From Macrostomum lignano (taxonomy: Eukaryota), in contig NIVC01001174.1 in assembly GCA_002269645.1 (NCBI GenBank), forward strand, positions 62,001 through 126,000: a DNA stretch of 64,000 nt. Direction: 5' to 3'. Below the pieces are notes generated by a model. It saw only the letters and a list, made by a program, of their open reading frames with translations, was not told the DNA's origin and ran no database searches. Positions 18,544-53,244 of the stretch are shown here, piece after piece. Position 1 is the stretch's first letter, and each line of letters starts with the position of its first letter. Position numbers and translations under genes: made by a program.

Positions 18544-21500
18544 ATGGCAGGTTTTTACAGCCTAGGGTTTTGCTTTCCTAGTTCTCCCACTAAATTCCTC
18601 ACCTTGTTGTAGGCCAGGTCCGCGCAGGTCTGGCCAGCCTCGGTTTCTTCGCCGAGCTGCAGCCCAGCGCCAGTCAGGTAGCGAATGTTGGCCGAGTGCC
18701 CAGCCTCGCAGGCCAGGTGCAGGCAGGTGGCGCCCTTCAGCGGCCCGCCGGTCGGCATCCTGGCGGACATCTCCATTTTTTCTCCCGCTATCTTCAGCAG
18801 GGAATCCTGCAGCTTGGCCAGGTCGTATTTCGATGCGAACAGGTGAATGGCGTGCAAACCCTCGGAGTTGGTCAGCAACGGTCTGTACTTCTCAGGCTGG
18901 CCGGCCATTTTCTGAAGAATGCCGAGCAGCATTGAGTCGCTGATTTCAGAGGCCATCAGACAGTTGCGCTTGTCGGAGTTCTCGGCAGTCAACGATATGC
19001 CGCCCTCCGTTTGAAAGCGTTCAAATTCAACAAAGAAGTTTTCGACGTCAAAGTCTCGCGACCAGAATTCCTGGCGCACTTTGAGCAGAGCGTGCAGCAG
19101 AGTGTTGCCTTTCTGATCCATGCAAGCCTGCCGTTTTGGCTTTATAAAGTCGGCAGACAAGAAGTCGAAGTTCTTCAGCAGGCAGGCTATGAATACCGGG
19201 TTGCGACCCTGGCGAGATAAGGCGAAATCAAAATAGGCTACTGCAAGTAGTACTGAATGAAAATTACGCTTGTAGTTGTAATTTTTGCTACCAGAGTGGC
19301 TAAATCTAGTCTTATTGTAAATAAAATATTTTTTCGCTGCACGAAAATGTGCGCGATTGTTCAGACCCATTGCATCCACTGCACTAGCTCGCCGCTACGT
19401 TTTCCGAAAATCAAAACCTCAATAGTTCCACCTGAGGAATCCGGCAGGGTCTGACAGTAGATACGAGCTACAACGGGACTTATATTTTCTTGATGAAAGG
19501 TTCAAAATACATGTAAGAATATTTATAAGTCAGTAGAGTTGACGAGAAGATGCTACGAGCGTACTTGCATTAGTCAGCTTCTTTGCTTGTGGTTTGAGTC
19601 TCCGTTAGTAAATTGCCTAGTTTTTAGCAGTTTCTATAATCATTAACTCGGTCCCCAGGATTTGTTTAGATGCAGATATTGCAGGATTTCCGCCATAGTA
19701 GCCTCATTAGGAGCCCATAAGGGGTTTTTTCAGACATTAACGTTTACCTTCTGGTCTCCTAAACAAATAGTAGGTAAGAACAGATGTCTATGTAAGCTAA
19801 AAATGAAGATCAAAGCCTCACCTCATGATCAATGGATCCCTCTATAGCCGCTGACGGAGTGTAAAACCCGAGCGCATCAGCAGCAGCTCGGAAGTACATC
19901 TCTCCGTAGTATCGGTTCGCGGCGCAGTAGTGCAGACAGTTCCGACCTTCGTCGTCTGCCGAGCTGAGCGTCACGCGCAAACTGCTCGCCTCCTCGCTTA
20001 GCAACCAGAGAAAGGCGCTCTCCTGACCCTCTGGCAGACGTGTCTCGTTGGCAGCCGCGCAGTGAACGGCGGTGCGACCTTCGGCATCGCGCCAAGTGAA
20101 GCACTCGTCGCCAAGACGGTTTCGAATGGACCGAAGGCAATCCGCACCCTGTTATTCATAATGATAATAATAACTGATTGCATCTGCCTCAATTGAGCCG
20201 GATGTGCAACCGACAGCTCAGCCGCAACTATTGCGCGACGCATTTGAAGGCTGCGTACGGCTGTTCAGTCCAAGGACTGGGGGGTCGCCACACACCCTCA
20301 ATTGCCCCAGCTAATGCTGGCACCCATTTTACAGCTGGGTGCACTGAAGCAATGCAGAGTTATGTGTCTTGCTCAAGAACACAAATTGTTTCGAGTGCGA
20401 TTGGGAATCGAACCCCCGACCTTTCAGTTGTTATTCCGACGCTCTAACGACTGGGTGGCTACCTCCTCAGTTGTTCAACAAGTTCGTAGCAAAGATTCAT
20501 TTGAATAAAACTGTATCAGGAATGCTTTTGCCTGCCTGTCGCCATCAGTCAGCCTGCCGCCTTATACTACAAAAAAGGTGCTTCTAAGGTGACCTGTTGA
20601 ATACGTAGATATAGAAAGAGTTCTACGATCGATAAAGTTTAATTTAAGGTATAATTGACTCCGCATCACTGATTGCTCATGGAAAAGCGGTTTTTTCTGG
20701 CAATAAAGCAGTAAAATTCTGCTAACGAGTGGGTAAAAATGTCAATAAATATAGTCGAAATTCACCTGAAACCAAGCCGCCAGATGAATTGGGGAATTTT
20801 TCTTCTCGTCCCTCTCTTTGAGACAGTCAGGAGTCAGCTGCTTGACGAACCAGTCCAGCGCGTCAGGAGAGTTTCGATTTTTGGCCGCGTACATCACGGC
20901 AGTCCGGCCGAGGAAGCCCTTTCGCAGGAAGCCGTCCAGTTTGCCCAGTTGCTTCTTCGCCCTCTCCAGCAGCTGCACGCTTCGCTTCTCGGCGCACGCG
21001 TGCAAAGCGTTCGTGTTGCTGATGTTGCCCAAGATGAAGATCTCCTTTGGCAGGTTGTTCAGGTGGAGCATCCATTTGAATGTCGTCTCGTTTGGATTGT
21101 GCGCTGCGTAATACGCCACGGATCGTTTCGAGTCGTCTAGAGCTTTGAAGCAGTCTTCTCCACAGAGTCTCTTCATCAACTGCATCGCGCTGCTGTCCAG
21201 CTTCCAGGCGGCGAGATGAACCGGTGTAGCACCCGATCGAGTCCTGCTAGTCATGTACTCAACTCCGAATGAATCCGCCAGTATTTCGAATGTCTTGCAC
21301 ACAACAGCTGGGTCCTTTGTGCTATCGACTGCCGCCATGTGAGCAAGATTCCAGCCCTGCTCAGGGTCAGTCTCATCAGCTAAAGTGCGTTCTCCTTGTC
21401 CTTTTCCTTTTCGTACTTTGCTGTGATTCTTTACTGAAACGCCTGTTCTGGGCGGCAGCAGCCGTTCCAGTGCGTTGTTGTCCCCATCGGCAATGCATTG

Positions 21501-21677
21501 AACTGCCCGATTGAAAAGTTCTTTCAGATCTGCGTCTTCTGGCTTTGGCGAAATCTGAACTGACGCCGAACCGCTCGCGCCTCGACGCAGTGATTCCGAG
21601 TCCACGAGGGTGCCCCCGTAAGGATTTGTGGCAACAAATGACGCCGTGGTTTCTGCTTTAATTGTGGTTCCGGTCAT
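6090..21677 (-). CDS. Ankyrin-repeat TRP channel with TRPM-like transmembrane core (~1476 aa, 6 coding exons)
   Basis: Exons 21677-20766, 20148-19822, ~19394-18603, 10383-8693, 8496-8178, 6479-6090, all with GT/AG and matching phases (0,0,0,2,0). About 14 ankyrin-type motifs (GATPVHLAA, GRTAVMYAA, GNTLLHALL, GATCLHLAC). S4-S5 TIGPKVSML..DDLMPFLLILAVMIVSFGV, S6 LVNIVMWNLLIALFS, TRP-box-like IWRKTSY, LPLPLSLL, C-terminal coiled coil. The exon 3 acceptor is the weakest junction. Confidence 0.85.
6580..8032. repeat. 20/22-bp composite minisatellite in the last intron of the TRP gene
   Basis: Units ggcactcaccaacagacagt, ggcactctcaccaacagacagt and ggcactgtcaccttcagatagt, with repeated multi-unit blocks. 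Confidence 0.95.
11492..11590 (+). repeat. Dispersed repeat, copy 1 (related to 30729-30815)
   Basis: atgaggggccaatcccc..aagacacagagtgtacatacctgacgactagaa..tacaccctgtgtgagcg aligns with atgagggccaaccccaaggcacagggagtgcacatacgtgaaaattagaa..cacaccctgtatgagcg. Confidence 0.6.
11782..11823. repeat. (TG)n microsatellite, left flank of the CAC...GTG element
   Basis: Near-pure TG run; a matching run at 18505-18541 lies on the other flank. Confidence 0.9.
12477..15812 (+). CDS. P-element (THAP9-like) transposase, 3 exons, ~865 aa, apparently intact
   Basis: Exons 12477-13685, 13901-14560, 15084-15812 with phase-0 GTGAGT donors. THAP C2CH finger (CCASGC..FHRFP..RW..ICSKHF), LCLDGM, VVDQ, DVPHCLKNARN, and QDHVE|NLFCIIR across a junction. 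Confidence 0.92.
14790..15028. repeat. (GACT)~60 microsatellite in transposase intron 2
   Basis: Pure gact run of ~240 bp. Confidence 0.97.
18505..18541. repeat. (TG)n microsatellite
   Basis: Pure TG run directly right of the CAC...GTG element. Confidence 0.9.
20158..20468 (-). mobile_element. tRNA-derived SINE
   Basis: On the minus strand: A-box-like gtagccacccagtcgttag, B-box ggttcgattccc, a central segment tgtgttcttgagcaagacac..cacccagctgtaaaatgggtgcc resembling widespread metazoan SINE core domains, and a (tta)n-like tail. Confidence 0.75.
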
Positions 21678-26617: not shown

Positions 26618-27264
26618 CCAAATGAGAGACATGACGCACCAAATGAGAGTCATGAGACACCAAATGAGAGTCATGAGACACCAAATGAGAGTCATGAGAC
26701 ACCAAATGAGAGTCATGAGACACCAAATGAGAGTCATGAGACACCAAATGAGAGTCATGAGACACCAAATGAGAGTCATGAGACACCAAATGAGAGTCAT
26801 GAGACACCAAATGAGAGTCGTCATGGGACACCAAATGAGAGTCATGGGACACCAAATGAGAGTCATGAGACACCAAATGAGAGTCATGAGACACCAAATG
26901 AGAGTCGTCATGGGACACCAAATGAGAGTCATGGGACACCAAATGAGAGTCATGAGACACCAAATGATCGAGAGTCATGAGACACCAAATGAGAGTCATG
27001 AGACACCAAATGATCGAGAGTCATGAGACACCAAATGAGAGTCATGAGACACCAACTGAGAGTCATGAGGCACCTAATGAGAGTCATGAGACACCAAATG
27101 AGAGTCATGAGACACCAACTGAGAGTCATGAGGCACCTAATGAGAGTCATGAGACACCAACTGAGAGTCATGAGGCACCAAATGAGAGTCATGAGAAACC
27201 TAATGAGAGTCATGAGACACCAAATGAGAGTCATGAGACACCAAATGAGAGTCATGAGACACCA
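26618..27264. repeat. 21-bp minisatellite (~30 units)
   Basis: Unit ccaaatgagagtcatgagaca with 24-bp and point variants. Confidence 0.95.
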
Positions 27265-27934
27265 AAGGAGAAAATCACAGCAAGTGAATTCCAATCGATG
27301 TCAACCAATTAAGGTAACAATTTTGGCTCAGCATTAGCCCCGCAAAAATCCCATTTTCAATCCGGGAATTGATGGGAAATCCACGGCGCTGATTATTCCC
27401 AAAGGGCTGGCAAGTGTTTTCCCCACCTCTCAGGCGAATAATAATTTATCCCCCAGGTCCGCTGAGTTGGGAAAGATTTCCCACCGGCTGGGTGGATGCC
27501 GCAAAGTGTCGAAGTTATAAAGTGTTCTGCTGCCTCTGATTTATTGCTCAAATAAAAACGCTTGATAGGGAGAGCATTTTTGCTTTCTTTGGCTCTCAGG
27601 GAAGTTTTTCTGGAGCAATTTATTGGGAAATATAAAGCATCGCACATTGGGTGGAAAATGACTCAGCCAATGATGCAGCCATAGGCCTTGGAGCAGATGC
27701 CTTGAGCATTGATAAATTTCATATCTAAGCATAGTTTAATAATTTAGTTCTGGTTTCAAACCTTAAAAGACTCTTTGTTCAACAAAGGCAATTTTTTATC
27801 AAGCTGAAATGCAGCAGGTTTTCGATGAGAAAAAATCAGCGTCTGGTCGAAGTTCGCGCGGTTTTGGATTTCTCAGCCAGCCACGAAAATCGAAAAGTTT
27901 CACGTCCGGCTTCAATGGCCGCGGCGGGGTGAGT

Positions 27935-28825
27935 GTTGGAGGCGCTTGTGTGTGTGTTGGGGGCGCCGTGTGTGTGTTGGGGGCGCCGTGTGTGTGTGTT
28001 GGGGGCGACGTCTGTGTGTGTTGGGGGCGCCGTGTGTGTGTTGGGGGCGACGTCTGTGTGTGTTGGGGGCGCCGTGTGTGTGTTGGGGGCGCCGTGTGTG
28101 TGTTGGGGGCGCCGTGTGTGTGTTGGGGGCGCCGTGTGTGTGTTGGGGGCGCCGTGTGTGTGTTGGGGGCGCCGTGTGTGTGTTGGGGGCGCCGTGTGTG
28201 TGTTGGGGGCGCCGTGTGTGTGTTGGGGGCGCCGTGTGTGTGTTGGGGGCGCCGTGTGTGTGTTGGGGGCGACATCTGTGTGTGTGTGTTGGGGGCGACG
28301 TCTGTGTGTGTGTTGGGGGCGACATCTGTGTGTGTGTGTTGGGGGCGCCGTGTGTGTGTTTTGGGGGCGCCGTGTTTGTGTTGGGGGCGCCGTGTGTGTG
28401 TTGTGGGCGCCGTGTGTGTGTTGGGGGCGCCGTATGTGTGTTAGTGGCGCCGTAAGTGTTAATGGCGCCGTCTGTTTGTTGGGGGCGCCGTGTGTGTGTT
28501 GGGGGCGCTGTATGTGTGTTAGTGGCGCCGTAAGTGTTAATGGCGCCGTCTGTGTGTTGGGGGCGGTTTTGGTGTTGGGCGCCATTTAGAGTGTTGGGGC
28601 GCCATTTAGAGTGTTGGGGGGCGGTTTTGGTGTTGGGCGCCATTTAGAGTGTTGGGGCGCCATTTAAAGTCCCTGGGGCGCCATTTAGAGTATTGGGGCG
28701 CCATTTAGAGTGTTGGGGTGCCATTTAGAGTGCTGGGCGCCATTTAAAGTGCTGGGCGCCATTTAGAGAGTTGGGGCGCCATTTAGAGTATTGGGGCGCC
28801 ATTTAAAGTATTTGGGGTGCCATTT
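27935..28825. repeat. G-rich 20-bp minisatellite, two subtypes
   Basis: gtgtgtgtgttgggggcgcc units (to ~28560) grade into gccatttagagtgttggggc-type units. Confidence 0.95.
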
Positions 28826-28933
28826 AGAGAGTTAGTTTGCGGTCCAGTATGCTTATTTCTCTGTCGCTCAGACTATCCAGCGAGTATATACTCAAATATC
28901 AAAGTGCAGTGCAGTGCAAGGAAACTCAAGCAA

Positions 28934-31900
28934 ATGGGAAAAAGGCAGAGTTGCAGGATTTATGCGGCAAACTGGGAAGAAAGTGTTGCTCCCAAAACAG
29001 ACTCATCAGTCAGCTGGTATGGAGTCCCGAAAGAGATTCGTGTTTTTTCTCTCCTAGAAATTGGGAATAACATTCTGGTTGCTGTAGACAGAATTAATTG
29101 GGAGATGCTTTTTGCCTGCTTGACTTTGCTTGCGGTTTTTCGTCTTGACTGCCACTTTTTTGTGCGGATCGGCCAGACAAACACTGAGAGAGTGTTGTGT
29201 AAGTGTGACAGCCACTGCTCACTTGCTCAGGACATCATTCGCTTGACTGTTAAAGCTAAGAGTAATTTATGGATATCTTCAGCACAGGAATCCATGGGAG
29301 ATGAGGATCTCACTCCCTAATCTATCAGAGATTAGGATCTCACTCTCTAATCTATCAGAGAGTAGGGTCTCACTCCCTAATCTATCAGAGAGTAGGGTCT
29401 CACTCTCTAATCTATCAGAGATTAGGATCTCACTCTCTAATCTATCAGAGAGTAGGATCTCACTCCCTAATCTATCAGAGAGTAGGGTCTCACTCTCTAA
29501 TCTATCAGAGAGTAGGATCTCACTCCCTAATCTATCAGAGAGTAGGGTCTCACTCTAATCTATTAGAGATTAGGATCTCACTCCCTAATCTATCAGAGAT
29601 TAGGATCTCACTTTCTAATCGATGAGAGATGAATGAAGATTTCATTCCATGAGAGATAGGTAAGATTTCACTACCTAATCCATGAGATGTTCCGAAATCT
29701 CAGCCGTCCAATTCTCTCCGCAGCTGGCGGGCCATTTCGAGGGCATCAACCAGCTGGACAGACTTCGCTCACGGGCAATCGATAAAATGCTGGTGGCCGA
29801 TCAAGAGGCCAAGAAGCGAGAGGTGCAGCTGCTGATAATTGGTGAGTCGGGAGAGGCAGGAGACTCAGATGACAAAACTGCCTGACCTTCTGCTGCAAGG
29901 CGAATCCCAGGGCTTTAAACAGGTTTTCACAGTTAACCCCCACCTGAAGGGGAGCTGAAAATCAGCTTTGTAATTGTCTGTTTATCTGTGTACTAACCGC
30001 GGCCAACTCCGCTTAACTTGACAGGAAAAGTTCAATTAGCGTAATTTCAAAATAGGATGCGTTAAACTCGATGCGTCCCCTTATTCTGTTTGAAAGATTG
30101 TCAAATTTAATAAAAAAGTTCCTTTTTTCAAGAGATCTGAGGCGCAGTAGTCGTCTTTTGAGTCTACAGAAAGACTTTGCCAAAGAAAATTATTGTTAAA
30201 AGAACTGACACGGAATGTAGAAAGATTTTCGTGCTTAAAAATGTAATGATCTTTTTACATTCGTAGGCCGCAGCCTCGTGACCCGCGAATTCTTTATTGC
30301 ACTCCGTGCCCCGCCGCAATGACCGCACGCAGGGACCGCCGAGGTTGAGTTAAAAAAAAAACTCTACAAATAAAAAAGCTGAACTGGCTACGCACGAAGT
30401 GAGCGGGGTTCAGAGGGGAAGAATTGGTAAAGTCATTCCTGTCTGACGTTTTTGTCCTCTTTCTCATAGACTGATTGCACAGGTCCTAGTTCCAATGATT
30501 GATAAAATTTCGACAGTCCCAGGCAGATAAAAGTTAAGGACAGAGACCAGGTTCTGATGATGGACCAGACGTCAATTAAAGTCGAATATTAAAATGTCTC
30601 TAAAAGTGGCTCTGTAGACTCCGTAGGGGTAGAGCAGCTCAGTAGGGGTGGACTCAGGGTTGGAGTCCGGTCCCTGGATCGATTCCGTGCGCGAAAATTT
30701 GCCAGGAGGTTGTCGTCTGACGCACCATCATGAGGGCCAACCCCAAGGCACAGGGAGTGCACATACGTGAAAATTAGAACTCAGGGCCGCTGCACACCCT
30801 GTATGAGCGTGTGTATCTTCGCGGCCTAAAGTTCTTCGCGGTTAAGTAACAACTAACAGGACGCAAACGTGTCAGAAACTTCAACCGATCTGTACGCGTT
30901 TTTGTCCGGCTTGACTTTTTGTTGTGGTTTTGTAATTGCGTCGACAAATGGGGACTCTTACTGTTCATAAAGCCTGTGAAAACAATGCTGGCACGAAGCA
31001 CACTCAAAATCACTGGTTTCTAAGCCAATCTACCCCCGAGTCTCTTCACTCATCTCTCTCAACAGGCGGCACGGGCAGCGGCAAAAGCACGCTGGTCCGA
31101 CAGATGCGGATCCACCACGGCGACGCGTTTCCGGACGAGAAGCGGCGGCGACTGGCCGACAGAGTGCTGGAGAACCTGGCCGACGGAGTGCAGATTGTCC
31201 TGGAGAATATGCGGTCCAGGGACTGCTGGTTCAAGGACGAATATGTCAGGGTACAAACTGTGCACGTTGCAGTCAAGCCTATGTCCACATGCTTTCAGTA
31301 GCTATGCAATAATTCAATTAATAATTAACGATCAAGTTTCATTTTCAAAGCGAAGGCTTAAGGGGCTTAAAAGGACAGATAAAGGAGGCGAGGGGAATAC
31401 CCGTATCTCCTGGTTGAAAACTACGTGTCTTTTTGTAGAAGCAGACATAAGCTTAGGGCAATACTAAAAAAATTGAAACAGATTATAGAGAGAAAACCAT
31501 CCCTTCTCTCCGAGTTGATTGAAAAATGCTCGGCATCAGAAATTGATGAATGTCATAAAATGCTTGATTAATGCTAATTCGTGTCAGTGAATACGTTACA
31601 GAAGTTACAGGTCTCTTAGTATGCAGCCAATTGTATTCCTATAAGTTTTCGATCTTAGTCTAAAACTGCTTTCCTAATGAGAAGACTAAAGCAATAATCT
31701 TGATGCCCTGTGCCGCCCTGTGCCGAATCTCCTGTTACCATTGCACACAAGTTCGAGTAATTCACTAGTAGATTAACTGCTACATGCATTTGACACTCGC
31801 ACAATAGTTGTTTGCTATGAATTGCTGGTCTAATTACTCAAAAGGATTATTCTCACTCGTTCCCATCCAGGACATGGCTGCGGAGTTCCTGGCGCACTGC

Positions 31901-34129
31901 CCCCGCTTCAACCGCTGCATCTTCCGGGTGCCGAACCGACTTGAAAACATCGCCGACAGCATCCATTATGCCCGCGTCGAATTCGCCGACGCTGGCATCG
32001 AGGACGAGAAAGATGAAGACTCCGACAGCGAGGAGCAGTTGGAAGCCGATCATAACGATGATAGCGGAAACTGCCAGCGTAGACGTCGACAGCATCGTCG
32101 CGGACTTTGCCAGCTTGTTGAGGCGGAAGAGATTGATGACCCCGACGGTGGACCAGGCCGTATGAAAGGTTCCGAGTCACCTTCGTTGATCTTCTACTAC
32201 GATTTGCAGGTCAAGGAACCTTTAGATAATGCTGGTGCTACCGATAGCGTCGAAAACCCGTCATTGACAACCAGCAACTCGCTGAACTCCCGCTCCTTGG
32301 CGCCCAGTTACGTCAGTACGCTCGACTTTGCGTCATTGCGTCGAAAGCTGGACGCTTTGGCGGCGGAAAAAACGCCACGGAAGGCGCGGGTGGGCCGCGG
32401 CACGGACGGCACTACCGTGGCGAAGTACTTCGTGCGTCATCTGAAGAACATCACGGCGCAACCGGAGTTCGAGGAATGTCTTCTTGACGCTGAATATTTT
32501 AGACCAGAAATCACCTATGCTGAGATTTAGTAAGTGTTGCTGTCTTTTTTTATCGAAATTGCGCCAGATAAACTGTGTAGTTTTGAACTTCTGAGGCTCT
32601 TACGAGCGAAACTTTGGTGCTCGTTGGTCAAACGACCAAACTGTGATGATCATTAGTCAAACTTTGATGCTGTTAATCAAGTTTTAAACGTCGCCTGTAA
32701 AGCTTTGAGTCTGTGGGGTAGATAAAAAAACAATTTTCTTTTAAAAAATAATTATGAGTAATAGCTTTGATATCTATTAACCTTCCTATTGCGATACACA
32801 TTAATTCGATTTCTTCTTCAGTTTCATTCGTCACGTGGACCGGCTAATCCAAGAGGATTATACGCCCAGCCTGCAGGACATCCTAGCCATACGACGGCCG
32901 AATCACGCCGTAAAGGAGGCGAGCTTTTCAATTAGCGGTTGCTCGTTTAGGTAAGCCAATTTAAGAGAAGTTCAGGTTGTTCCCGAAAATTCTAACCCTT
33001 ACCATATTAGCATATATTTCAATTCTTCTCAATGTTCTTCAATGTTTCCTATCGGCGTGATAGGAAAACATCTTTTCCAATGTTTGAAAAGATAGGAAAG
33101 CCGATCGCTCTTTGCAAACTTTACGAAATATTCAGAATCATCGACTTGGCCGATTACCGACGCCAGCGCTGTCGCTGGCTGCACTACTTCGAAGACGTCA
33201 GCGCGGTGCTGTTCGTGGCGTCGCTGACCGGCTTCTCCGAGCTGATTGAGGACGGCGATAGAATCGTGAGTCAAATCGTCTTGTGACAGAAAATTTATCT
33301 AAAATGTTCGTCTAAATTACCTTTTTTATTCTTTCCAGACCGTAAAAATGACCGAATGCCTAAGGCTATTCGGCGAAGTGGCTAGTAGCAAGCACCTGTG
33401 GAAGAAGGACCTATTTCTGTTTCTAAATAAGTTGGATCTGTTCGAGAAGGCGCTGCAGAAGAAGAGCATTGCTGGCCTATTTCCCGATTATCGAGGTCAG
33501 AAAATGAGCAGATTTTATTTTGAAACATATTACTCTTGTTTGTGGGAAATAAATTCTGTAGGCTCCAACTGTAGGATATTTTGCAATTCTCACTGAGAAA
33601 CATGATGTGCGGATGTACCGAGCTTCAGTTATAAATGATACAAAAGTTACGTGAAATGGTTGCAATTTCAGTAGAAAGTAAGAAAAGGACGTTGAGGTGT
33701 TGGTTCGAAGGAGGCATTTTGCAGCTGACACAAATCAAGGTGGCAGTGAACCCACAGCCACCGAGGAAGACATGCAGTTGTGCGTACCACAACTCTCCCA
33801 TCGTCATCCATGTACATGCAGGCTCTGTCTTGTAGGTTGACTTGACTACGTGTCCGGGATCCGGTACGTCAACCTGTATTTCAGTCCATTTTATCTGTAG
33901 CTCTGCATAATCCCCAACTTCTCATCCAGGCCGCGACGATGTGTCAGAGAGCAGTCAATTCATCAAGGAAAAGTTCCTCAGCCTGCTGCCAAAGAATCTA
34001 CCCAAGTCGAAGCGTGTATTCGCCCACGTAGTGAGCGCTATCGACATCGAGGGCATGCGAAAAATTTTCGGCGAGGTGCTTCGCAAACTTGCCGAGGCCA
34101 ATTTGAAAAGGAGCCTGCACGTGTTCTGA
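28934..34129 (+). CDS. Highly divergent heterotrimeric G-protein alpha subunit (~550 aa, 8 exons)
   Basis: Exons 28934-29008 (tentative, MGKRQSC), 29724-29841, 31066-31250, 31871-32529, 32822-32950, 33136-33265, 33339-33495, 33930-34129, with consistent phases (0,1,0,2,2,0,1). Motifs RSRAIDKML..EVQLLIIG, SGKSTLVRQMRIHH, DYTPSLQDIL, WLHYFEDVSAVLF, LFLNKLDLF. Confidence 0.88.
29305..29620. repeat. 30-bp tandem repeat in G-alpha intron 1 (~10 units)
   Basis: Unit ggatctcactccctaatctatcagagatta with variants. Confidence 0.95.
30729..30815 (+). repeat. Dispersed repeat, copy 2 (related to 11492-11590)
   Basis: See the alignment given for 11492-11590. Confidence 0.55.
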
Positions 34130-36162
34130 CTAAGACACCAACGTCTTTAGTGGTTTAGTGTCAGTGACATTCAATGTAAATTAATTCATGTAAAGAGACC
34201 AACCCAAAAGCTCGTAAAATCAAGTATACCATGTCCATTTATACTTGATTTACTGATTGATGGTATCGTTTATGTCGATCACGGCTTACTTTCATGGCTT
34301 ACTGCTACAGTCTTCACTGCAGTTAAAGCTTCTTTACTGGACTTTTTCAGTTTACACTGGCTATCGGTCAAAGAGAAAATTCTTTCTCACCTTGGTCAAT
34401 GCAACATCTCTGACTGAAAAACTTTCCAAAGAAATCCTAAGCGAGGAAAAGTGTGCCAGTTGTAGCAGGGCCAGCCTTGAGTCTCTCCGGCTCCTTTTGT
34501 CCTTTGGCGCTTTTTCTCTCCCCGTTCTCATGCAGTCACGCAACATTTTCTCCTATGGACTCTGGCGAACGTCAGTCTCTTTACGCTCCATCTCGAGGGC
34601 AGCCTTTCCGCCATTTGAATGCGACGGCATTCTGTCGCAGATGCCGAGTGTTATTGAGGCTGGCTCTGAGTGAGGGTAATATTAGTGAGAGTAAAATTGT
34701 GCAAGCCTGAGCATGAGACGAGAAGTGACTAAGTAAATGGTGTTAGTTGTGAATTCAACTTGGCGATCATTTGGATACTTATGCCAGTCACTATATTCTT
34801 GTAGATAAAAATTTTTTAATGCGCTTCTAGACGTCAGGTGTAAAATTATTCTAAAGTTTTACCCCAGTAGTCCGAAAAAATGATGCTAAAAAACATACAA
34901 ATCAACCTACTTTTAGTAGTAAAGAGGCCCCTGAACGGATCGGCGGCTAAGAATTTGAAACACGGAGAGCGAGAATCACGAGAACTTACAATAATGAATG
35001 TTTTTAGGCTGGTTCGCAACACCGTTTAAGTATTCTTTCGTCTGAAAAACTTACTCACAGTTTTATTGTGTGTCAAAGAGTGTCAGCTTTCTAAGAAGTC
35101 AATATTTAATGTTTGTTTAGAAATCGTAAGATGTTAAGAATTTAATGTCACGAATAAAAAATGAACGCTAACTCTACATTTTAACAAAATTAATTATGTT
35201 GGGACCAAAAGACCAAATAAAATACCAAATACCAAAAGACGCATGCAAATAAGTAGATGAAAAATCATGCAAAGGCTAAATAGGATGCAAAATGAGTTTC
35301 TTTGTGCAATATCAAACTTTTTTTGACAGAGTACATCAAATATTCGAACCCACGCCTATTAAATAAGTATATATGATTTGAATGTTTCCAGAAAAACTGA
35401 AATAAATAAATTTCTAGCCGCCCAAACGAGCTTCAAAAGTGTTTGAGACACGAAAAAGTTTCAGAAAAAAAAGTCATTTAGAAAAACAGTAAGACTAAAA
35501 AAGCAAAACAGCAACAACTCTGAAACAATCAAAAAGCACGCCTTTATTGTAAGATTGACCATTCTCGCCATGTTTAACTAAATTTAATGACTTCTACTGG
35601 TTCTATCGAGCTGATTGGTTTTAGAGCTCCTTGAAGTGACAGTTTACTGTTGAAGTACTTAACGATTGTGATTGACGAGGGTAGCCAACTTAGCTAACTT
35701 GTAACCAATTGTTTTACAAAACCTTAATGTGCATAACATACTGCTTAAGATAATAGCAGTAGTTAGTGCGCGTCAAAGATTAACGAAGGCAAAGGTGGTA
35801 AAAGAAACAATTAAGTTGTGACAATTATGAAAATTAAGTTGCAAATTTACTCATCACACATAATAATCCAGTATTGATCCAACGGTTGGCACTCACTGAC
35901 TCTTAACCAAGTAACTGAACTGCAATAATTTCTGTAAGTTACACTCGTACGCACATCTAATGAGTTCTAGAATTTTTTCTTATTGTGATATTTAAATTCA
36001 TTCAAACCGTTTGGCTTCTGCACCTGGAAGCAAACAAAATTACTAAATATTCGTCTTTAAAATGAAAACCTTAAATACTACTAAAATCTGAGGAAATTTG
36101 CATCCAAAATAAATAAAAACGGTCAGTGCAAAACCACTTAAAATGATGAACACCGACTTCTC

Positions 36163-39100
36163 TTAAACTTCGGTAACGACGCACTGCACAACCGCCTGTG
36201 CAGCCTGCACGGCCAGTACCGCCTTCTCCCGATTCGAACTCTCCGACAGATCCAACGCCCGACCGTTGCGCTCGTCCACGAAGGCGCTCGCCAGCTGTGA
36301 GACGTGATCCAACACGGTCTGCGTCAGATCGGTGTCCGAAATGCAGCACAGATGCTGGCTCAGCTGCTGTTGACGATCCACTGCTTTACCCTGCTTTGTC
36401 AGCAACGCCTTCAGCGCCTTCTCCGCTGCCTGCCAGCTGATGAAGCTGGCCCATTCGAACTCGCCCGCTTCGATCCATCGCTCTGCTGAGCGCAGTTTTG
36501 TCTCTGCAGTTTCCAGGCACTTTTCTGCACTGTCGGCAGAAGCTCGGCCAGCACTGGAGCCTTCGGAGAAGTGCAGCCCGCCGCCTGCGACGCCTCCGCC
36601 GTGGCGTCTCAACCAACTGATGACGACCTCTTCAGCAGTGAATATGAGGCGACACCTGGCTACTCGCTCAGCCTGCTTCTGCCAATCGTTAATGAACTCA
36701 TGGAATTGGTGAGTCCAGTTGTGCTCAGCAGCGAATGATTTTATCTGTTCAAATGAATTAGCAGTACTTGAGTAGTGAGTCAGAGTCCGTTGCAGTACTT
36801 GACGCTGCTTGTCGGTCGGCAGCGAAGCTGCACTGCTCAACAGATGGTCAATGGACGCTCTGACATCAGTGTTTCCATGTGGAACCGATGAATAAACTGA
36901 AGCTGGTTGGTTCTCGAGTAAGAACAGCTCAGCTGTCGTGGCTTTGACGTGAGCACTTTCGCCAGCGTCAATGATGTACTCACTGGTCCATGGATTCTCG
37001 ACTTCAACAGGGAGCTTCTCTAGCACTTTGGCGTACACAAAGCATCCGTACTTATCCTTGTAAGCCACAGTTTTGCTCACTAGGTCTATCGGCTTTGCTG
37101 GCAGATGCCTGAGCAGGCAGTTTTTAAGCTGTGGCAAAGCCTGGCCAATCAAGGAAGCGCCCATGGTACTTAGCTCCATGCTCTTCTGACTCTTCACTTT
37201 GTGCAGAGAAACTTTACGCTTTTCCAAAACTTTCAGCATACCTTCGGGACTGTCCATCAGAAGCACAATTGTCAAATGATTTCCATGCTCCGGTGATATT
37301 TTGAAGCCATTCTGTAAAACTTTCTGAACGATATCCACAAAGTCCATCTGCCAAAGCATTCCCTTACTACCGCTGAGGTGTTCAGGGATGGCTGCATGGC
37401 TCATAAGAATCTTCCGTCCTTGCAGCAGAAAGTTCTTGTCTTCAGCTGAGTCGCGTTGCTCGACACCGTCAAACTGCAGGCAGGTCCGCAGCTCCGACAG
37501 GCAGACAACCGAAAATCGGGACAGAAGAGAAGAGAGAGAAGCAAAAACTTCATCACCTTTGACGGATAAGTCTTTCGAATTGTGCAAAATGATGCTAGTG
37601 ATGCACTGGAGCAGCACTGGGTGCCTCAGCTTAGCTTGAAGATTGCATCGGGCTGCACAGTTTTCCCCAGCGCTGCACCGATCGCTGACCTCCGTCAGCA
37701 GCTTCTCGCTCACATTCTCGCTCAGTCCTTTGAGCCCCAAGTCGGCTGCGAGGCTGAAGTACAGCCTGCGCAAACTGTCACTACCCAGCTCGCAGAAGCT
37801 GAGATCGAGAAATTTGACACACTTAGATTCCGCTAGCCTCTTCTGGTAGCCGTCCGAGTCGTTGATTGTGAGCTTCTGGCAGTCCACCAGCTCGAACTCG
37901 GTATCTATTGCGTCCTGGAAGTCGTCAGGTAGCACCAGTTTAGTAGGTAGGAATAGCCTTTTTGTGGACTCAAATTTCAGCTTTCCGCCTTGTTCTAATA
38001 AACCGATCATTGTGGTCAGGCATCGGTGCACGGAAGTAAGCTGATTTTCAGTTAGATAATATTGCTGATGCTGTTCGTCGTGAATGAGCTCCAGGACCAG
38101 CCTCAGTTGCTCCAATGTTGCTGATTTGGTGGCGCCCAACTTAGTAAACAGATTTAAATGACATCTGAAATCACCTGGACAGACCTGGATGTACGGTGGC
38201 ACCGAGGTTTTTTCTTCGAATGTGATTCTGTTTGGGGTGACGAAGCACGGGTCCCATCTAGGGCCTGTGAAAATGCAAGGAATTTTTCTCAAACGTGCAA
38301 TCACATTTCCCATTTTGGCACTGTTCATCCTCGTCAGATGTTCATAAATAGAGCTCATGGTCTTGAGCCTTAAACTCGCAGCAGTGTCGTGCATTCTAGA
38401 TGAAGTGAATGCTTCGTTGGACAAAATGTTCTGCAAATGACGCTCAAAAGCCTCATCGGAAACAGTCTTCATGGACTTATTCAAGCAAGGTCCGCAGTCA
38501 AGACAAGCGTACGACTCAACAGTCCAACAAAGGTAACGTGAGCTAAATTTTACGCACTGGGAGGGACTTTTCATGCAAACAGCATCGCCTGGACAAAGAC
38601 TGTGTAGGTCCTTGTCGTCATTCGCTACTAAAAATGGAATCTGAGATAGTTTCTGGACAAATTTATCTGTTAGATGCGTCCGAAAGCCCACACTGTCGAT
38701 AAATTTCAGCAGCATTTTCGATCTGTTTTTAAGATCATCAGAAATGCCAACAGTCCCTTCCGTGCTGATGTCATTGGCAAACTTAATAACAGTATCAGCT
38801 GAGCACTCAGTAATTAAGCCAGCATGGAGCATCAGCTGTCTCCAACGGCCACACTGGAACCGCTCTGGAAGAAAGTTTTCTGAATCCAAAGTTTTTTCGA
38901 ATATAAATACCGTGTGATCATAAAACGCATTAACCCTCTTCCAGCCGCATTGTGTCGGAATGATACTTGCTTCCTGTAGAGAGCTTTCGAGTTTCCTTAA
39001 GTTTTGAGATTCATCTGATTTCATAAACGGAATTCGATCAAAGTTTCTGCTCATTTCGCAGAGTTTCTCTAAATGCTTCTCTCGAGTTGGGTCGGACAAT

Positions 39101-42100
39101 TTAGAGAAGGCAGGAAGGATGAAGTTTGCGTAGACTTCAGGTTCCGATATTTCATCGCATTTTAGTTTACTGTACAGTGATCTGAGTGCGGTGTTGTCCT
39201 TCAGGAAGATGGCCTGGCTGGAGCTCTTCCACTCGTCCATCTCGTCGGCAACGAGCGTCGCCGGCAAGATGCAGGCCTGCTCACAGTTGAGCGCTCGGCA
39301 GTGACCGTCAGAAGTGACGAACACGGGCCACTTTCGCAACCGTTCCAGAATGTTTTTCTCGCCTTGATTTTCACTTAGCTGCCGCCAATGATTTTGAATG
39401 TACTGGAGAAAGATCACAGCTTCCTCTTCCGTAGCTGAAGTTCTTTCGGGATTTTCAGTCAGAGCGAATTCAATCACTCGAAGCATTGACTCGTGCCTCT
39501 GGAAGTTGCCGCATAGTTTTTCAACAAGCTTTAGGCTGGACATACTAAGCATTGGAGCATTCAGCTTCCGAAGAGACTTCTCGACGGCTAAGCTGTAGTC
39601 ATCGAGACCATCAACTTGGACGACAGGCGCGTAAACACACGAGGCCCGTGATATGCTAACTAGACGATGCTCATTGACAGGAACCAGATGAGCATTTTTG
39701 AGCCCGGCAGACACTAGAGAATGCAGCGGATCTTTTTGATTCGGGCAGCTGAGATTGAAAAAGTCCCACGCTCGAATGAGCCAATTTTCCAGAGCCTCTG
39801 TGTCCATGCCAACCTGGTGCATGGGCGCGTAAATGCTTTCTGCACTGAAGATTTCACTGTTTTCTTTTCGCAATATGTTGCAGAAGTCCGTCACTTGAAA
39901 GTCTCTCACAATATTAAACGTTTTTAGTTTGTCAATCTCAGCTTTGGAAAGACAAGAAATGAATGTTTTGTGCACAAACTCTTGCCTAGCTTCTGTGTGC
40001 ATAAACAAGTCGAAATATTCCGTAAAGAAGAGTCCTTTGTCTCCGGATTAAAAAAATGACAGCTGTCCTCCAGAACTTAAATTTAGAGGCGCTCCATTCA
40101 AATTAGTCGACTTTGTTTCCAACAAATACTTGATAAACTTCAAGACGGTTTCAGGACGCTCGAAAGGAGTCTGCTCTACATCTACAGGTACAGAGGCTCG
40201 CAATGCTGCACAGACTGGGCCGTTGAGAAACGCAATGATTGATGAAGCATCCGCGAGCAGGAAGGAATCCAGTTTGCTGGACCTCAGCGATTCTACCAGT
40301 TGCCGTTTTTCGGACAAAACGAGCGGGAACTTCAATTTGTAAAGAATCTGCTTTATTGGATCTTTTAGATCGCCTGCAGCGAGAAATACAGCAGTCCCAT
40401 CGACTTCGCTCAAGCGCTGTGCAAGTGGAAGCCACTTCAAAGTCTGCGGCTGCTCACTTGTAGCTGGAAATATTTTCAGTCGGTTTCTAAACGCATTCTG
40501 GAAAAAGGCCTTTGCAAGCTCGTCAAAGAATGCCATGTCTTTTTCATGACAATCTGGGAGAAGCTTAAAATACTCAGGCACACTGGATTCAGTTAATACA
40601 AAGGTCCTTGCTGTTTCTAGAATACTTCCATAGCATTCAGGTAGCAGCTGCGTTGCCAACATGCGGTTCCATTGTTCCTTATAGTCAGAATTTCCGCTCG
40701 CTTTCCAAAGAGATCTTCGCGACGGGTCCAGAATGAAGTGACCGTTTACGTGAACAGGCAGCCCAGTGGTCACTGGCAGTGGAAGCAGGCAGTAGGCACG
40801 GCCCTTCACTGCCGATGTTGCTGCTGATCCAGGCAAAAGAGCGGCTACTCCGGTCTTTGGAAGAAGACCCCACTTTCCTGTAAATACTTCCTGTTGCACT
40901 TTTTCTGTGACAGTGATGTTTCTACTGCTCAACTTTTGACAAACAAGCCACCTTGCTTTTGAGTCCACAGATTTCCCCGTACAAGTTGTGGTGAGCTCAT
41001 AAGTTACTGAGCTGATTGGAAGAGCATCAAGCCTGATTCCTTTAGTCATTAAACTTTGACTGGCCACTTCGCATTTATTCTTGAAATCGTCCAAGCCTTC
41101 TTTAGAATCTGGCAGCCTGTCTGCTTGGACTCTTACGGTGTAGAGCGTATTGAGAACGCCGTCCTGCGATACTTCACCAAGCTTTACCTCCTTGACATTA
41201 ACCAGAAACAAAACTGCTTGTTCCAGTTCTTCTTTTGCCAACTGCTCATCAAATAGCGTCTTGATTTCGTTTGCATCCACAACCTTTTGGCAAATCTTTG
41301 ATTGATTTGAAAACCTCAGTGGTAGACGGAAAACAGTACCTCCTTTCTGCTGCAAATGTTCTGGAAGGTATCCAGCAAATACATCCGTAAATGTATCTTT
41401 CAGATTCTCCAACTCCTTGAACATTCCTCCAGGAGTAGCGGCCGTCGCACCAGGCATGTATTTGCAGTGCGGATCCATCACACACAGTACTTTGCCGTCA
41501 GAAAGAAATGACGGCGCGTCAGTAATATTGTACACACAGTTGAACCCAATTCCGTAATTCCCTGCTTTCCACAACTCGTCACGCTTGGATCCAACGCCGA
41601 GATCCTGGATGCCTTCAATGTCAGCATCGGAGAATGTCGAGTCGTTATAGACGAGTAGCGCAGGTCCCTGTAGCTCCTTCCAGTTGTCGCTCAAAACTCG
41701 TTCGGTTCCGTGATGCCGATGATCGATGATGAAGCTGATCGTCGATGCTCCCGCGTCATCAGCATTCTGGATGAGTTCTTTGAAGAGTTCGCTGCCGAAT
41801 GGATAGCCAGCCAGAATGCTCTTCAGTCTAGTTGTGAGATCCTCATGCTGACCAAATGGCAGCGGCCTCATCGCCTGCGATATCATGCTCTCGCGCTGGC
41901 TCCGGATGCCAAGCTTTTCGCACAGATCGAATGACAAAGTTTGGTGACAGAAGTAAGTGCCATCTGCTAGCTGGACAATGTCCATCCATGGAATATTATT
42001 GAAGCATAGCTGGCTACATGGCCTCAAGACGCCAGTCTTATCTGGGGCGAGAAGTTCGTTCTTATGTTGGAATTTCTCTGTAGAGTTCACAATTTTATAA

Positions 42101-45042: not shown

Positions 45043-45122
45043 TTTGGAGGCCTGTGTGTAGGGTTTTGAGAGGCTTGAACTGTGATTGAAGTACATGAGA
45101 ATGCGTGACTTGCACGCATGCA

Positions 45123-45169
45123 TGACTGACTGACTGACTGACTGACTGACTGACTGACTGACTGACTGA
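45123..45169. repeat. (GACT)n microsatellite upstream of sacsin-1
   Basis: About 11 tgac units. Confidence 0.95.
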
Positions 45170-52432: not shown

Positions 52433-52446
52433 GCTGGGGCCCGTGC

Positions 52447-53238: not shown

Positions 53239-53244
53239 TCTGAG

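What the first reader, a model, noticed from the sequence alone, without database searches (positions are those of the whole stretch)
28934..34129. Pseudo-GTPase G-alpha: intact gene with G1, switch I and G3 catalytic residues replaced
Seen: a full, in-phase 8-exon model with an N-terminal MGxxxSC lipidation-type motif and intact G4 (NKLD). P-loop GGTGSGKS replaces GAGESGKS (G42>T, E43>G in G-alpha-i1 numbering); switch I RRPNHAV replaces RVKTTGI (R178 kept, Mg-binding T181>N); G3 DLADY replaces DVGGQ (G202/G203 lost, catalytic Q204>Y); G5 VSAI replaces TCAT. Established: Q204 is needed for hydrolysis, and T181/G203 for Mg/GTP-driven switching and beta-gamma release. Inference: a maintained G-alpha that may bind guanine nucleotide but cannot run the normal cycle, i.e. 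a scaffold, constitutive or dominant-negative signalling component. This is the strongest novelty candidate in the window.
Basis: partly seen in the sequence, partly recalled or inferred. Interest (0 to 1): 0.85.

Follow-up and report, generated by a model that had tools for sequence, protein, structure and literature searches.

The report
Flatworm G-alpha with dead GTP switch
This is an intact but unannotated gene of the flatworm Macrostomum lignano for a G-protein alpha subunit that keeps its nucleotide-holding residues but has lost those that sense and split GTP; the same odd gene is conserved in flukes and tapeworms, so it looks like a working "switch-less" signalling protein, not a dead gene.

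Summary
Only the 5' end is uncertain: exon 1, which carries MGKRQSC, needs a weak GTCAGC donor, and two other in-frame starts exist.

The window is Macrostomum lignano contig NIVC01001174.1. No gene is called over exons 3-8, and no matching protein exists in about 15 billion sequences.

The gene is not a one-off. It is the sister of a clade of 590-750-aa G-alphas in trematodes and cestodes (NJ bootstrap 100%) and shares their intron positions. All members lack G203, T181 and G183 and carry a large insert in the helical domain. The Opisthorchis/Clonorchis pair gives dN/dS 0.20 (core 0.10), so the degenerate family is under purifying selection. Its nearest relatives are less degenerate mollusc, brachiopod and cnidarian G-alphas, outside the five classical classes.

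In the window protein all near-invariant GDP-contact residues survive and all gamma-phosphate and switch residues are replaced. The best reading is a maintained, non-cycling G-alpha: a natural analogue of G203A-type dominant negatives and of plant XLGs. Biochemistry and expression in M. lignano are untested.

The parts
28934..29008 (+). Candidate exon 1 (MGKRQSCRIYAANWEESVAPKTDSS). Uncertain: it needs the weak donor GTCAGC at 29009.
   Evidence: (GC 0.45, intron-like); not conserved in the orthologues
29682..29723 (+). Alternative unspliced start: the ATG at 29682 is in frame with exon 2 (MRCSEISAVQFSPQ-). The acceptor at 29724 is phase 0, so the ATG that ends the M. lignano spliced leader would also be in frame.
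   Evidence: PMC8629364
29724..29841 (+). Exon 2: the alpha-N helix (LRSRAIDKML...EVQLLII). It ends in a phase-1 split of the first P-loop Gly, which by my recollection of human GNAI1 is where the GNAI/GNAQ exon border lies.
31066..31250 (+). Exon 3 (185 nt, the same length as in the trematode orthologues): P-loop GGTGSGKST (29841+31066..31091) and helix alpha-A.
31871..32529 (+). Exon 4: the helical domain, with a roughly 165-aa acidic/basic/Ser-rich insert (about 31910-32407) placed between helices alpha-B and alpha-C by alignment to Gai1.
   Evidence: a single-sequence fold was uninformative
32822..32950 (+). Exon 5 (129 nt): switch I RRPNHAV at 32892-32912 (R178 kept, T181N, G183A).
33136..33265 (+). 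Exon 6 (130 nt): G3/switch II DLADY at 33143-33157 (G203D, Q204Y), followed by RRQRCRWLHYFE, which keeps R208, W211, H213, F215 and E216.
33339..33495 (+). Exon 7 (157 nt): G4 NKLD at 33426-33437, intact.
33930..34129 (+). Exon 8: G5 VSAI at 34031-34042, the alpha-5 helix and C-terminus (...ANLKRSLHVF), and the stop codon at 34127-34129.

Best explanation
The locus is an intact gene of Macrostomum lignano, uncalled over exons 3-8 in the record held here. It belongs to an old, flatworm-wide lineage of G-protein alpha subunits that has given up the canonical GTP switch.

Shown: the protein has the full G-alpha architecture. It keeps every near-invariant residue that holds the base and the alpha/beta phosphates: Walker A G40, G45, K46, S47 and T48; D200; N269, K270 and D272; and A326. 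It also keeps most switch-II and alpha-N residues that by my recollection contact G-beta-gamma, and a normal alpha-5 C-terminus. It has replaced every residue that senses or attacks the gamma-phosphate: T181N, G202A, G203D and Q204Y, plus G42T and G183A.

Inferred: it can probably hold a guanine nucleotide, most likely GDP, and dock to G-beta-gamma and perhaps to receptors. It probably cannot undergo GTP-driven switch-II rearrangement, release beta-gamma, respond to RGS proteins or hydrolyse GTP at a useful rate. It would then act through binding alone, independent of nucleotide state. It could be a beta-gamma or receptor sink (a natural counterpart of G203A-type dominant negatives). It could also be a scaffold whose long, probably disordered helical-domain insert recruits partners, much as plant XLG proteins work.
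For: Family and motifs.

Orthology with the trematode and cestode proteins:
- NJ bootstrap is 100%, and the topology follows the species tree. The clade stays clean in a 244-sequence tree.
- Exon lengths are 118/185/.../129/130/157/200 in the window against 112/185/977/129/130/145/191 in Opisthorchis and Clonorchis.

Shared derived states across all flatworm members: loss of G203 (to D/E/L/Q), of T181 (to S/N/C) and of G183 (to A), and a large insert in the helical domain. V201L and C214Y are shared with the trematodes only.

Purifying selection in the degenerate family: Opisthorchis felineus against Clonorchis sinensis gives dN/dS 0.195 (CI 0.13-0.28), 0.095 for the core and 0.32 for the insert.

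The trematode orthologue is predicted to fold as a G-alpha with a mostly disordered insert.

Within the window gene: open frame, GT-AG splice sites and coding-type composition. It retains 27 of 43 near-invariant G-alpha positions, including all nucleotide-scaffold ones. Its Pfam score lies between the mollusc/brachiopod relatives and the neodermatan orthologues.

Precedents: the engineered dominant-negative Gai1 carries S47N, G203A, E245A and A326S (PMC9130316; PDB 1gg2 and 5tdh). Trematode orthologues naturally carry S47N and a non-Gly 203. Plant XLGs act without nucleotide cycling (PMC8584482).
Against: - There is no biochemical evidence.
- There is no expression evidence for the M. lignano copy. 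The record calls no gene over exons 3-8, and nothing closer than the ~39-44%-identical flatworm orthologues turned up in the two large protein collections, which include Logan assemblies of public sequencing runs.
- Selection was measured in trematodes, not on this copy.
- Q204 is kept in most orthologues, R178 in the non-schistosome trematodes, and T181S is conservative, so some family members might still hydrolyse GTP.
- Losses of near-invariant residues in the window protein are not statistically concentrated in the P-loop and switch segments (8 of 20 against 8 of 23, Fisher p=0.76). The contrast between the GDP scaffold and the gamma-phosphate sensors was drawn after the fact.
- The 5' end is unresolved, and with it membrane anchoring.
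Confidence: 0.55

Rival explanations
1. The protein is GTP-locked and constitutively active. It binds GTP normally but cannot hydrolyse it, because G42T, Q204Y and G203D resemble Ras G12/Q61 lesions and the Rnd/RhoH type of GTPase. It would then signal permanently to an effector rather than acting as a sink.
For: Walker A, NKxD, D200 and R178 are intact. G42 and Q204 are the positions of classical GTPase-killing mutations. The C-terminus and switch-II effector face are partly conserved.
Against: T181 is lost, G203 is replaced by an acidic residue and G183 is lost. These should prevent the GTP-specific closed conformation of switches I and II that an active state requires. G203A mutants stay bound to beta-gamma despite GTP (PDB 1gg2 and 5tdh; PMC9130316). 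Trematode orthologues add S47N, a substitution that weakens nucleotide and Mg binding.
Confidence: 0.15
2. It is still a working switch that uses non-canonical chemistry. It would cycle slowly, or with a lineage-specific GAP supplying the catalytic residue in trans, as Rap/RapGAP and HAS-GTPases do without the catalytic Gln.
For: R178 (the arginine finger) is kept in the window protein and in the non-schistosome trematodes. Q204 is kept in nearly all orthologues, and T181S is conservative there. Strong purifying selection on the core (omega 0.095) is compatible with a retained enzymatic role.
Against: The DxxG glycine, almost universal in switching GTPases, is absent in every flatworm member. 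The window protein also lacks Q204 and T181. The family scores 130-230 bits against the G-alpha profile, against 300-400 bits for its nearest relatives.
Confidence: 0.13
3. The M. lignano copy is silent or a recently disabled copy, even though the family is functional elsewhere. Q204Y would be a private lesion, and the open frame would simply not have decayed yet.
For: No gene model lies over exons 3-8 in the record. No protein with this sequence turned up in the two large protein collections searched. M. lignano is a recent polyploid with redundant copies (PMC8629364; homeologous contig). Q204Y is unique to this copy.
Against: All eight exons are open and every splice site is canonical. GC3 and codon usage are coding-like. 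This is the least degenerate flatworm member by Pfam score. Annotation of this contig is patchy anyway: the neighbouring sacsin-like ORF pair (2972 aa in all) has a called product of only 1342 aa.
Confidence: 0.12
4. The model is a gene-prediction artefact, and the odd motifs come from wrong exon choice.
For: Only exon 1 is doubtful.
Against: Switch I, G3, G4, G5 and all of the P-loop but its split first Gly codon lie inside exons and align without gaps to Gq and Gai1. The exon borders match those of the orthologues.
Confidence: 0.02

Closest known systems
Uncharacterised trematode and cestode G-alpha proteins: Opisthorchis felineus CRM22_002084, Clonorchis sinensis and Fasciola gigantica 'alpha-15 subunit', Fasciola hepatica D915_002867, Calicophoron, Trichobilharzia, Schistosoma mansoni XP_018652500, Taenia, Echinococcus, Sparganum
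   Same: These are the orthologues. NJ bootstrap is 100% and the intron positions match. All lack G203, T181 and G183 and carry a large helical-domain insert. NKxD is kept in the trematodes (TKxD in the cestodes), and the HYFE motif (C214Y) is shared with the trematodes. Identity over the conserved parts is 34-44%.
   Different: The window protein is less degenerate. It keeps S47, K46, R178, D200, W211 and N269 together. It alone has Q204Y. Its insert is shorter (about 165 against about 270 aa) and lacks the confident 4-helix module and the PPP...FEDELL motif of the parasite proteins.
Mollusc, brachiopod and cnidarian G-alphas: Terebratalia 'G-alpha 12a' M9V136, Potamilus, Sinanodonta, Candidula, Nematostella A7RLH8
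   Same: This is the sister group in the NJ trees (90-100%). The mollusc and brachiopod members share E43G, G202A (DVAGQ) and a hydrophobic residue at T182.
   Different: They keep T181, G183, G203 and Q204 and have at most a short insert. They look like working switches, with Pfam scores of 298-332 bits.
Engineered or disease dominant-negative G-alpha mutants (Gai1 G203A; S47N/G203A/E245A/A326S)
   Same: The DxxG glycine is replaced. Trematode orthologues also carry S47N. The expected result is a heterotrimer that GTP cannot dissociate (PMC9130316; PDB 1gg2, 5tdh, 7ts0).
   Different: Here the change is natural, ancient and under selection. The residue is acidic (D) rather than Ala. E245 and A326 are unchanged. 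The catalytic Gln and the switch-I Thr are also lost.
Plant extra-large G proteins (XLG1-3)
   Same: They are G-alpha-derived proteins with degenerate nucleotide motifs. They bind G-beta-gamma and act independently of nucleotide exchange, and they carry a long extra region (PMC8584482).
   Different: They arose independently. The XLG extension is N-terminal, Cys-rich and carries an NLS. The extra region here is an insert inside the helical domain, and Walker A and NKxD are intact.
Classical metazoan G-alpha classes (Gi/o, Gq, Gs, G12/13, Gv)
   Same: The fold is the same. By my recollection of the human GNAI1 exon lengths, the GNAI/GNAQ exon borders are shared (exons of 185, 129 and 130 nt; PMC5896119 for the class rule). 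The best solved-structure matches are Gq and Gi/o.
   Different: The clade falls outside all five classes in the NJ trees. It is not G12/13-like in gene structure or in similarity, despite the brachiopod name.

Membership tests
Heterotrimeric G-protein alpha subunit (Pfam PF00503) | Profile match above the curated threshold over the whole domain | tested here: met
   230.3 bits against a cutoff of 48.8, profile positions 3-330 of 333
Heterotrimeric G-protein alpha subunit (Pfam PF00503) | Ras-like domain with an inserted all-helical domain, an alpha-N helix and an alpha-5 C-terminus | tested here: met
   Alignment to Gq and Gai1. The orthologue P0001 model matches solved G-alpha structures with target-normalised TM 0.7-0.8. 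The window protein itself could not be folded because the tool does not accept spliced sequences.
Heterotrimeric G-protein alpha subunit (Pfam PF00503) | G1 Walker A GxxxxGK[ST] | tested here: met
   GGTGSGKST
Heterotrimeric G-protein alpha subunit (Pfam PF00503) | G2/switch I Arg finger plus Mg-binding Thr (RxxT) | tested here: not met
   R178 is kept, but T181 is Asn
Heterotrimeric G-protein alpha subunit (Pfam PF00503) | G3 DxxGQ | tested here: not met
   DLADY: only the Asp remains
Heterotrimeric G-protein alpha subunit (Pfam PF00503) | G4 NKxD and G5 (T/S)CA | tested here: met
   NKLD is intact. G5 is VSAI, with Ala326 kept.
Heterotrimeric G-protein alpha subunit (Pfam PF00503) | GTP binding, GTP hydrolysis and GTP-dependent release of G-beta-gamma | not testable with these tools
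   Needs recombinant protein
Flatworm degenerate G-alpha clade (unnamed) | Monophyly with the trematode and cestode proteins and conserved intron positions | tested here: met
   NJ bootstrap 100%. A clean 18-member clade in a 244-sequence tree. Exon lengths 185/129/130 are shared.
Flatworm degenerate G-alpha clade (unnamed) | Loss of G203, T181 and G183, and a large insert in the helical domain | tested here: met
G-alpha 12/13 class | Groups with GNA12/13, and has a GNA12-type gene structure that shares no exon borders with GNAI/GNAQ | tested here: not met
   It lies apart from human GNA12/13 in the NJ trees. It has the 185/129/130-nt exons that I recall for GNAI/GNAQ, whereas PMC5896119 reports no shared borders for GNA12. 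The best solved-structure matches are Gq and Gi/o.
Gi/o, Gq, Gs or Gv class | Groups inside one of these classes | tested here: inconclusive
   The clade plus a Nematostella and a Pigoraptor sequence is separate, with 100% bootstrap. Its link to Gi/o has only 52% support. The trees are NJ only, with few reference taxa.
PseudoGTPase (concept) | GTPase fold in which one or more catalytic or switch motifs are lost | tested here: met
   T181N, G203D, Q204Y, G42T
PseudoGTPase (concept) | Demonstrated lack of hydrolysis and/or of nucleotide binding | not testable with these tools
Plant XLG proteins | N-terminal Cys-rich extension with an NLS fused to a G-alpha-like domain; plant origin | tested here: not met
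   There is no N-terminal extension. The extra sequence is an insert inside the helical domain. It is an analogue, not a member.

The most novel reading that the evidence does not exclude
Cnidarians, molluscs and brachiopods carry a sixth, so far unnamed metazoan G-alpha class that vertebrates lack. In the ancestor of rhabditophoran flatworms this class lost its GTP switch. It has since been kept under purifying selection as a nucleotide-cycle-independent subunit: a natural dominant negative or scaffold that buffers G-beta-gamma or receptors. That would make it the first animal counterpart of plant XLG proteins, present in all major parasitic flatworms.
Probability: 0.3. Interest if true: 0.8.

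Novelty: new variant of a known kind. Interest (0 to 1): 0.62.

Why it matters
G-alpha subunits are the textbook GTP switch. Outside plants (the XLGs), I found no description of a selectively maintained G-alpha that has lost the DxxG glycine and the switch-I threonine, as this whole family has, and in this copy the catalytic glutamine as well.

Here the loss is phylum-wide. It occurs in Macrostomum, flukes and tapeworms, including Schistosoma, Fasciola, Opisthorchis, Clonorchis, Taenia and Echinococcus. In the fluke pair tested it is under purifying selection.

If the protein acts as a beta-gamma or receptor sink, or as a scaffold, it adds an unrecognised layer to flatworm GPCR signalling. It would also be a natural experiment on nucleotide-independent G-alpha function. 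Because the flatworm form is so divergent from the five classical G-alpha classes found in vertebrate hosts, it may be a parasite-specific node. M. lignano is genetically tractable, so the question can be tested directly.

The practical consequence is smaller: the gene needs a model in the Mlig_3_7 record, and the 'alpha-15' labels on the parasite orthologues are misleading.

Tried and rejected
1. The spliced protein could not be given to the exhaustive HMMER search or to the structure predictor, which accept only sequences found exactly in the window. I used the orthologue P0001 for both instead.
2. Aligning the separate exon peptides to the orthologues to build a profile gave a scrambled MAFFT alignment and was dropped. 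The same happened for exon 4 aligned with full-length G-alphas.
3. The first word-indexed search was swamped by the low-complexity insert and returned three hits. Removing the insert helped.
4. I looked for a homeologous M. lignano copy to measure dN/dS on this gene. The homeologous contig NIVC01003517.1 was reached through the sacsin-like neighbour, but the 10-kb flank stops short of any G-alpha. No other handle was available.
5. An exact look-up of the neighbouring 1691-aa ORF failed.
6. Single-sequence AlphaFold of the exon-4 peptide gave mean pLDDT 33 and says nothing either way.
7. Enumerating alternative first exons upstream gave 550 chance candidates, mostly inside minisatellites, and was not informative.
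8. A test for concentration of lost invariant residues in the P-loop and switch segments was not significant (p=0.76).
9. Literature searches for a described flatworm or animal pseudo-G-alpha found nothing specific. The planarian survey mentions one unclassified 'G-alpha-x' without detail.
10. Assignment to G12/13, suggested by the name of the brachiopod hit, was rejected on gene structure, similarity and tree position.

Full report
WHAT IS THERE. Reading window 28500-34600 and assembling the exons gives a plus-strand gene of eight exons. They are 28934-29008, 29724-29841, 31066-31250, 31871-32529, 32822-32950, 33136-33265, 33339-33495 and 33930-34129. All introns are GT-AG, and the CDS is 1653 nt (550 aa) with its stop at 34127-34129. 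The product matches Pfam G-alpha PF00503 at 4.6e-68 (230 bits, cutoff 48.8) over profile positions 3-330 of 333. It aligns to solved Gq and Gi structures in two blocks separated by an insert. tblastn finds only this one G-alpha in the window.

THE MOTIFS.
- P-loop GGTGSGKST: G42T and E43G, with Walker A GxxxxGKS/T intact.
- Switch I RRPNHAV: R178 kept, T181N, T182H, G183A.
- G3 DLADY: D200 kept, V201L, G202A, G203D, Q204Y.
- G4 NKLD is intact.
- G5 VSAI: C325S, A326 kept.

I defined 43 columns that are at least 90% identical in 225 other G-alphas. The window protein keeps 27 of them.
- Kept are all those that contact the base and the alpha/beta phosphates: G40, G45, K46, S47, T48, D200, N269, K270, D272 and A326.
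- Also kept are R178, E186, R205, R208, W211, F215 and E245.
- Lost are all the gamma-phosphate and switch positions: T181, G183, G202, G203 and Q204.

Taken over whole segments the losses are not statistically concentrated (Fisher p=0.76). The scaffold-against-sensor contrast is therefore descriptive and was drawn after the fact.

NOT CHANCE, NOT A MODELLING ARTEFACT. Intron sequence has stop codons at 5.9% of positions, which makes a 550-codon open frame very unlikely by chance (about 3e-15). The other two frames of the CDS hold 20 and 23 stops. Exons have GC 0.55 against 0.30-0.46 for introns, and GC3 is 0.67. Apart from the split first Gly codon of the P-loop, the motifs lie inside exons.

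THE 5' END IS UNCERTAIN. Exon 1 (MGKRQSC...) joins in frame only through the weak donor TCA|GTCAGC at 29009. The stronger-looking GTATGG at 29017 is out of frame. Exon 1 has intron-like GC of 0.45. Two alternatives are equally open.
- An ATG at 29682 is in frame with exon 2 and needs no splice (MRCSEISAVQFSPQ-LAGH...).
- Exon 2 begins in phase 0 behind a good acceptor. The 35-nt M. lignano spliced leader ends in ATG and is added to about 30% of genes (PMC8629364), so trans-splicing would give M-LAGHFEG....

The trematode orthologues start in the exon homologous to exon 2, and their N-termini have neither Gly2 nor a conserved Cys. The 'lipidation motif' is therefore unverified.

ORGANISM AND ANNOTATION STATUS. 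The neighbouring sacsin-like ORF found a 100%-identical protein on contig NIVC01001174.1 of GCA_002269645.1. By my knowledge this is the Mlig_3_7 assembly of Macrostomum lignano, and the best named hits are M. lignano BOX15_Mlig proteins. The window is record positions 62001-126000 in the same orientation. In window 31004-55042 the record calls only the sacsin-like gene, so exons 3-8 of the G-alpha carry no gene model. The word-indexed search with the window protein and the exhaustive HMMER search with its orthologue P0001 over 1.84 billion cluster representatives, re-scored locally against the window protein, found nothing closer than 39-44% identity. I therefore found no transcript-derived protein. 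This is absence of evidence, not proof that the gene is silent.

IT BELONGS TO A FLATWORM-WIDE CLADE. The closest proteins are 590-750-aa products of trematodes and cestodes. The trematodes are Opisthorchis, Clonorchis, Calicophoron, Fasciola, Trichobilharzia, Dicrocoelium, Schistosoma, Heterobilharzia, Paragonimus and Echinostoma. The cestodes are Taenia, Echinococcus, Spirometra and Sparganum. They are named 'hypothetical', 'uncharacterised' or 'alpha-15/alpha-11 subunit'.

In an NJ tree with 200 bootstraps, the window protein plus these proteins form a clade at 100%. Macrostomum is sister to (cestodes, trematodes), the branching I expect from the accepted flatworm phylogeny. In a 244-sequence tree the clade contains only these proteins and their mollusc and brachiopod relatives.

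I reconstructed the Opisthorchis and Clonorchis coding sequences by exact spliced alignment. Their exons are 112, 185, 977, 129, 130, 145 and 191 nt. The window gene has [75], 118, 185, 659, 129, 130, 157 and 200 nt. The intron positions are therefore conserved.

THE DEGENERATE STATE IS ANCESTRAL AND SELECTED. Every flatworm member lacks G203 (D/E/L/Q), T181 (S/N/C) and G183 (A) and has a large insert in the helical domain. V201L and C214Y (HYFE) are shared with the trematodes only. Further losses occur within the parasites:
- trematodes and Sparganum have S47N;
- cestodes have R178Q and N269T;
- schistosomes and cestodes have D200N or D200H.

Q204Y is private to the window gene.

Pfam G-alpha scores fall in steps: 398 bits for Pigoraptor, 332 for a mollusc, 317 for the brachiopod, 230 for the window protein and 128-202 for the neodermatans. 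Between O. felineus and C. sinensis, dS is 0.20 and dN is 0.039. That gives omega 0.195 (bootstrap CI 0.13-0.28), 0.095 for the G-domain core and 0.32 for the insert. An open frame shared in this state by Macrostomum and Neodermata cannot be a decaying pseudogene lineage. Selection on the M. lignano copy itself could not be measured, because the homeologous contig reached through the sacsin-like neighbour does not extend to a G-alpha.

WIDER RELATIVES AND CLASS. The sister sequences are mollusc proteins (Candidula, Potamilus, Sinanodonta), the brachiopod Terebratalia 'G-alpha 12a' and one Logan transcript. These carry GGxGSGKST, R[KRW]PTxGV and DVAGQ, so they keep T181, G183, G203 and Q204. 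Next out is a Nematostella protein with canonical motifs.

Its attachment to Gi/o has only 52% support. Its best solved-structure matches are Go/Gi, or Gq for the window protein, and not G12/13.

The exon borders match the GNAI/GNAQ pattern as I recall the human gene: a phase-1 split of the first P-loop Gly, 185 nt equal to GNAI exons 2+3, then 129 and 130 nt. Lokits et al. report that GNAI, GNAQ and GNAV share borders while GNA12 shares none (PMC5896119). The G12 label is therefore probably wrong. Whether this is a separate sixth class needs a proper ML analysis.

STRUCTURE. The spliced window protein could not be submitted. The orthologue P0001, folded with a 92-sequence alignment, gives a confident Ras-like domain and helical domain (pLDDT 85-97). 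Its insert is mostly disordered (residues 119-190, 254-277, 285-361 and 366-380 have pLDDT below 50), but it contains a confident four-helix module at about 191-256. Foldseek returns only G-alphas, with target-normalised TM 0.7-0.8, among them the G203A and G203A/A326S dominant-negative heterotrimers 1gg2 and 5tdh.

The window protein's insert is about 165 aa and rich in D, R, S and E, with a DEDSDSEE run and an RRRRQHRR run. It lacks that helical module and has only a vestige (SPSLIFYYDL) of the parasite motif PPPxxPxTPPPxxFEDELL. Folding exon 4 alone was uninformative.

HOW IT MOST LIKELY WORKS. What is shown is the pattern of kept and lost residues, the orthology and the selection. What follows is inferred from established G-alpha biochemistry, from my own knowledge.
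- The DxxG glycine amide binds the gamma-phosphate, and its flexibility lets switch II close.
- The G203A (Gai1) and G226A (Gas) mutants bind GTP but stay on beta-gamma.
- T181 ligates Mg in the GTP state.
- Q204 positions the attacking water.
- G42 substitutions, like Ras G12 substitutions, impair hydrolysis.
- G183S makes G-alpha insensitive to RGS proteins, and T182 is a key RGS contact.

The protein should therefore still hold a nucleotide, probably GDP. It should dock G-beta-gamma, since alpha-N and R208, W211, H213, F215 and E216 are kept. It may dock receptors, since the alpha-5 ...ANLKRSLHVF is kept. It should not switch, release beta-gamma, respond to RGS proteins or hydrolyse GTP.

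That predicts a sink for beta-gamma or receptors, or a scaffold, that works independently of nucleotide state. The engineered dominant-negative Gai1 used for cryo-EM carries S47N, G203A, E245A and A326S (PMC9130316). Trematode orthologues carry two of these four kinds of change naturally. Plant XLGs are the known natural precedent for a nucleotide-independent G-alpha (PMC8584482). The rivals are a GTP-locked always-on form, a working switch with non-canonical catalysis, and a silent M. lignano copy. I weigh them in the Rival explanations section.

NOVELTY. I found no paper that describes this clade or any animal pseudo-G-alpha. A planarian survey lists one unclassified 'G-alpha-x' and ten truncated 'G-alpha-like' genes without discussing residues. 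The orthologues exist in databases but are uncharacterised and partly mislabelled. I rate it a new variant of a known kind. It is of moderate to high interest, limited by the complete lack of biochemical and expression data.

Noticed in passing
window 12468-15812 (+): ORFs with a THAP domain, a TNP-like RNase H N-terminal domain and a TNP-like GTP-binding insertion domain. This is a P-element/THAP9-like DNA transposon split over at least three ORFs. It possibly sits inside an intron of the ankyrin-repeat gene on the other strand.
   Followed up: partly
window 50518-53256 (-): Pieces of an LTR retrotransposon: a gag zinc knuckle, an aspartyl protease and an integrase (H2C2 + rve). No reverse-transcriptase ORF of at least 130 aa is listed between the protease and the integrase. 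A 22-bp tandem array follows at about 53450-54200.
   Followed up: partly
window 36163-45123 (-) and 56307-64000 (-): Two tandem sacsin-like genes (SACS repeat region plus a C-terminal HEPN domain). The protein P0267, from the homeologous counterpart of the second gene, is about 77% identical to the first gene's N-terminal ORF. The record's called product for the first gene has only 1342 aa, although the two ORFs total 2972 aa. A homeologous contig, NIVC01003517.1, is 96.6% identical to window 53450-64000, consistent with the hidden polyploidy of M. lignano.
   Followed up: partly
window 26618-28833 and 29304-29629: Dense minisatellites lie directly upstream of the candidate ATG: 21 bp x 30, 20 bp x 31 and 20 bp x 14, the last ending about 100 bp before 28934. 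A 30 bp x 10.9 array lies inside intron 1. Together they create long spurious ORFs on both strands.
   Followed up: no
window 8656-10413 (-) and 18555-21677 (-): A 585-aa ORF with no Pfam hit lies near two ankyrin-repeat ORFs on the same strand. They may be one large ankyrin-containing gene (channel-like?) interrupted by the THAP9-like element.
   Followed up: no
L003 (Opisthorchis felineus SJOL01003685.1) and L004 (Clonorchis sinensis DF144032.1); protein P0001 residues 191-256: The helical-domain insert of the parasite orthologues contains a confidently predicted four-helix module and a conserved PPP...FEDELL motif. The insert evolves at omega 0.32, so it is constrained and not mere filler. 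The M. lignano protein lacks the module.
   Followed up: partly
proteins P0119, P0122, P0124-P0126, P0129, P0134, P0201 (those looked up, P0119, P0122 and P0134, are from chytrid fungi): These 590-740-aa proteins contain two tandem G-alpha domains. They are either fused gene models or true double G-alphas. They are unrelated to the finding.
   Followed up: no
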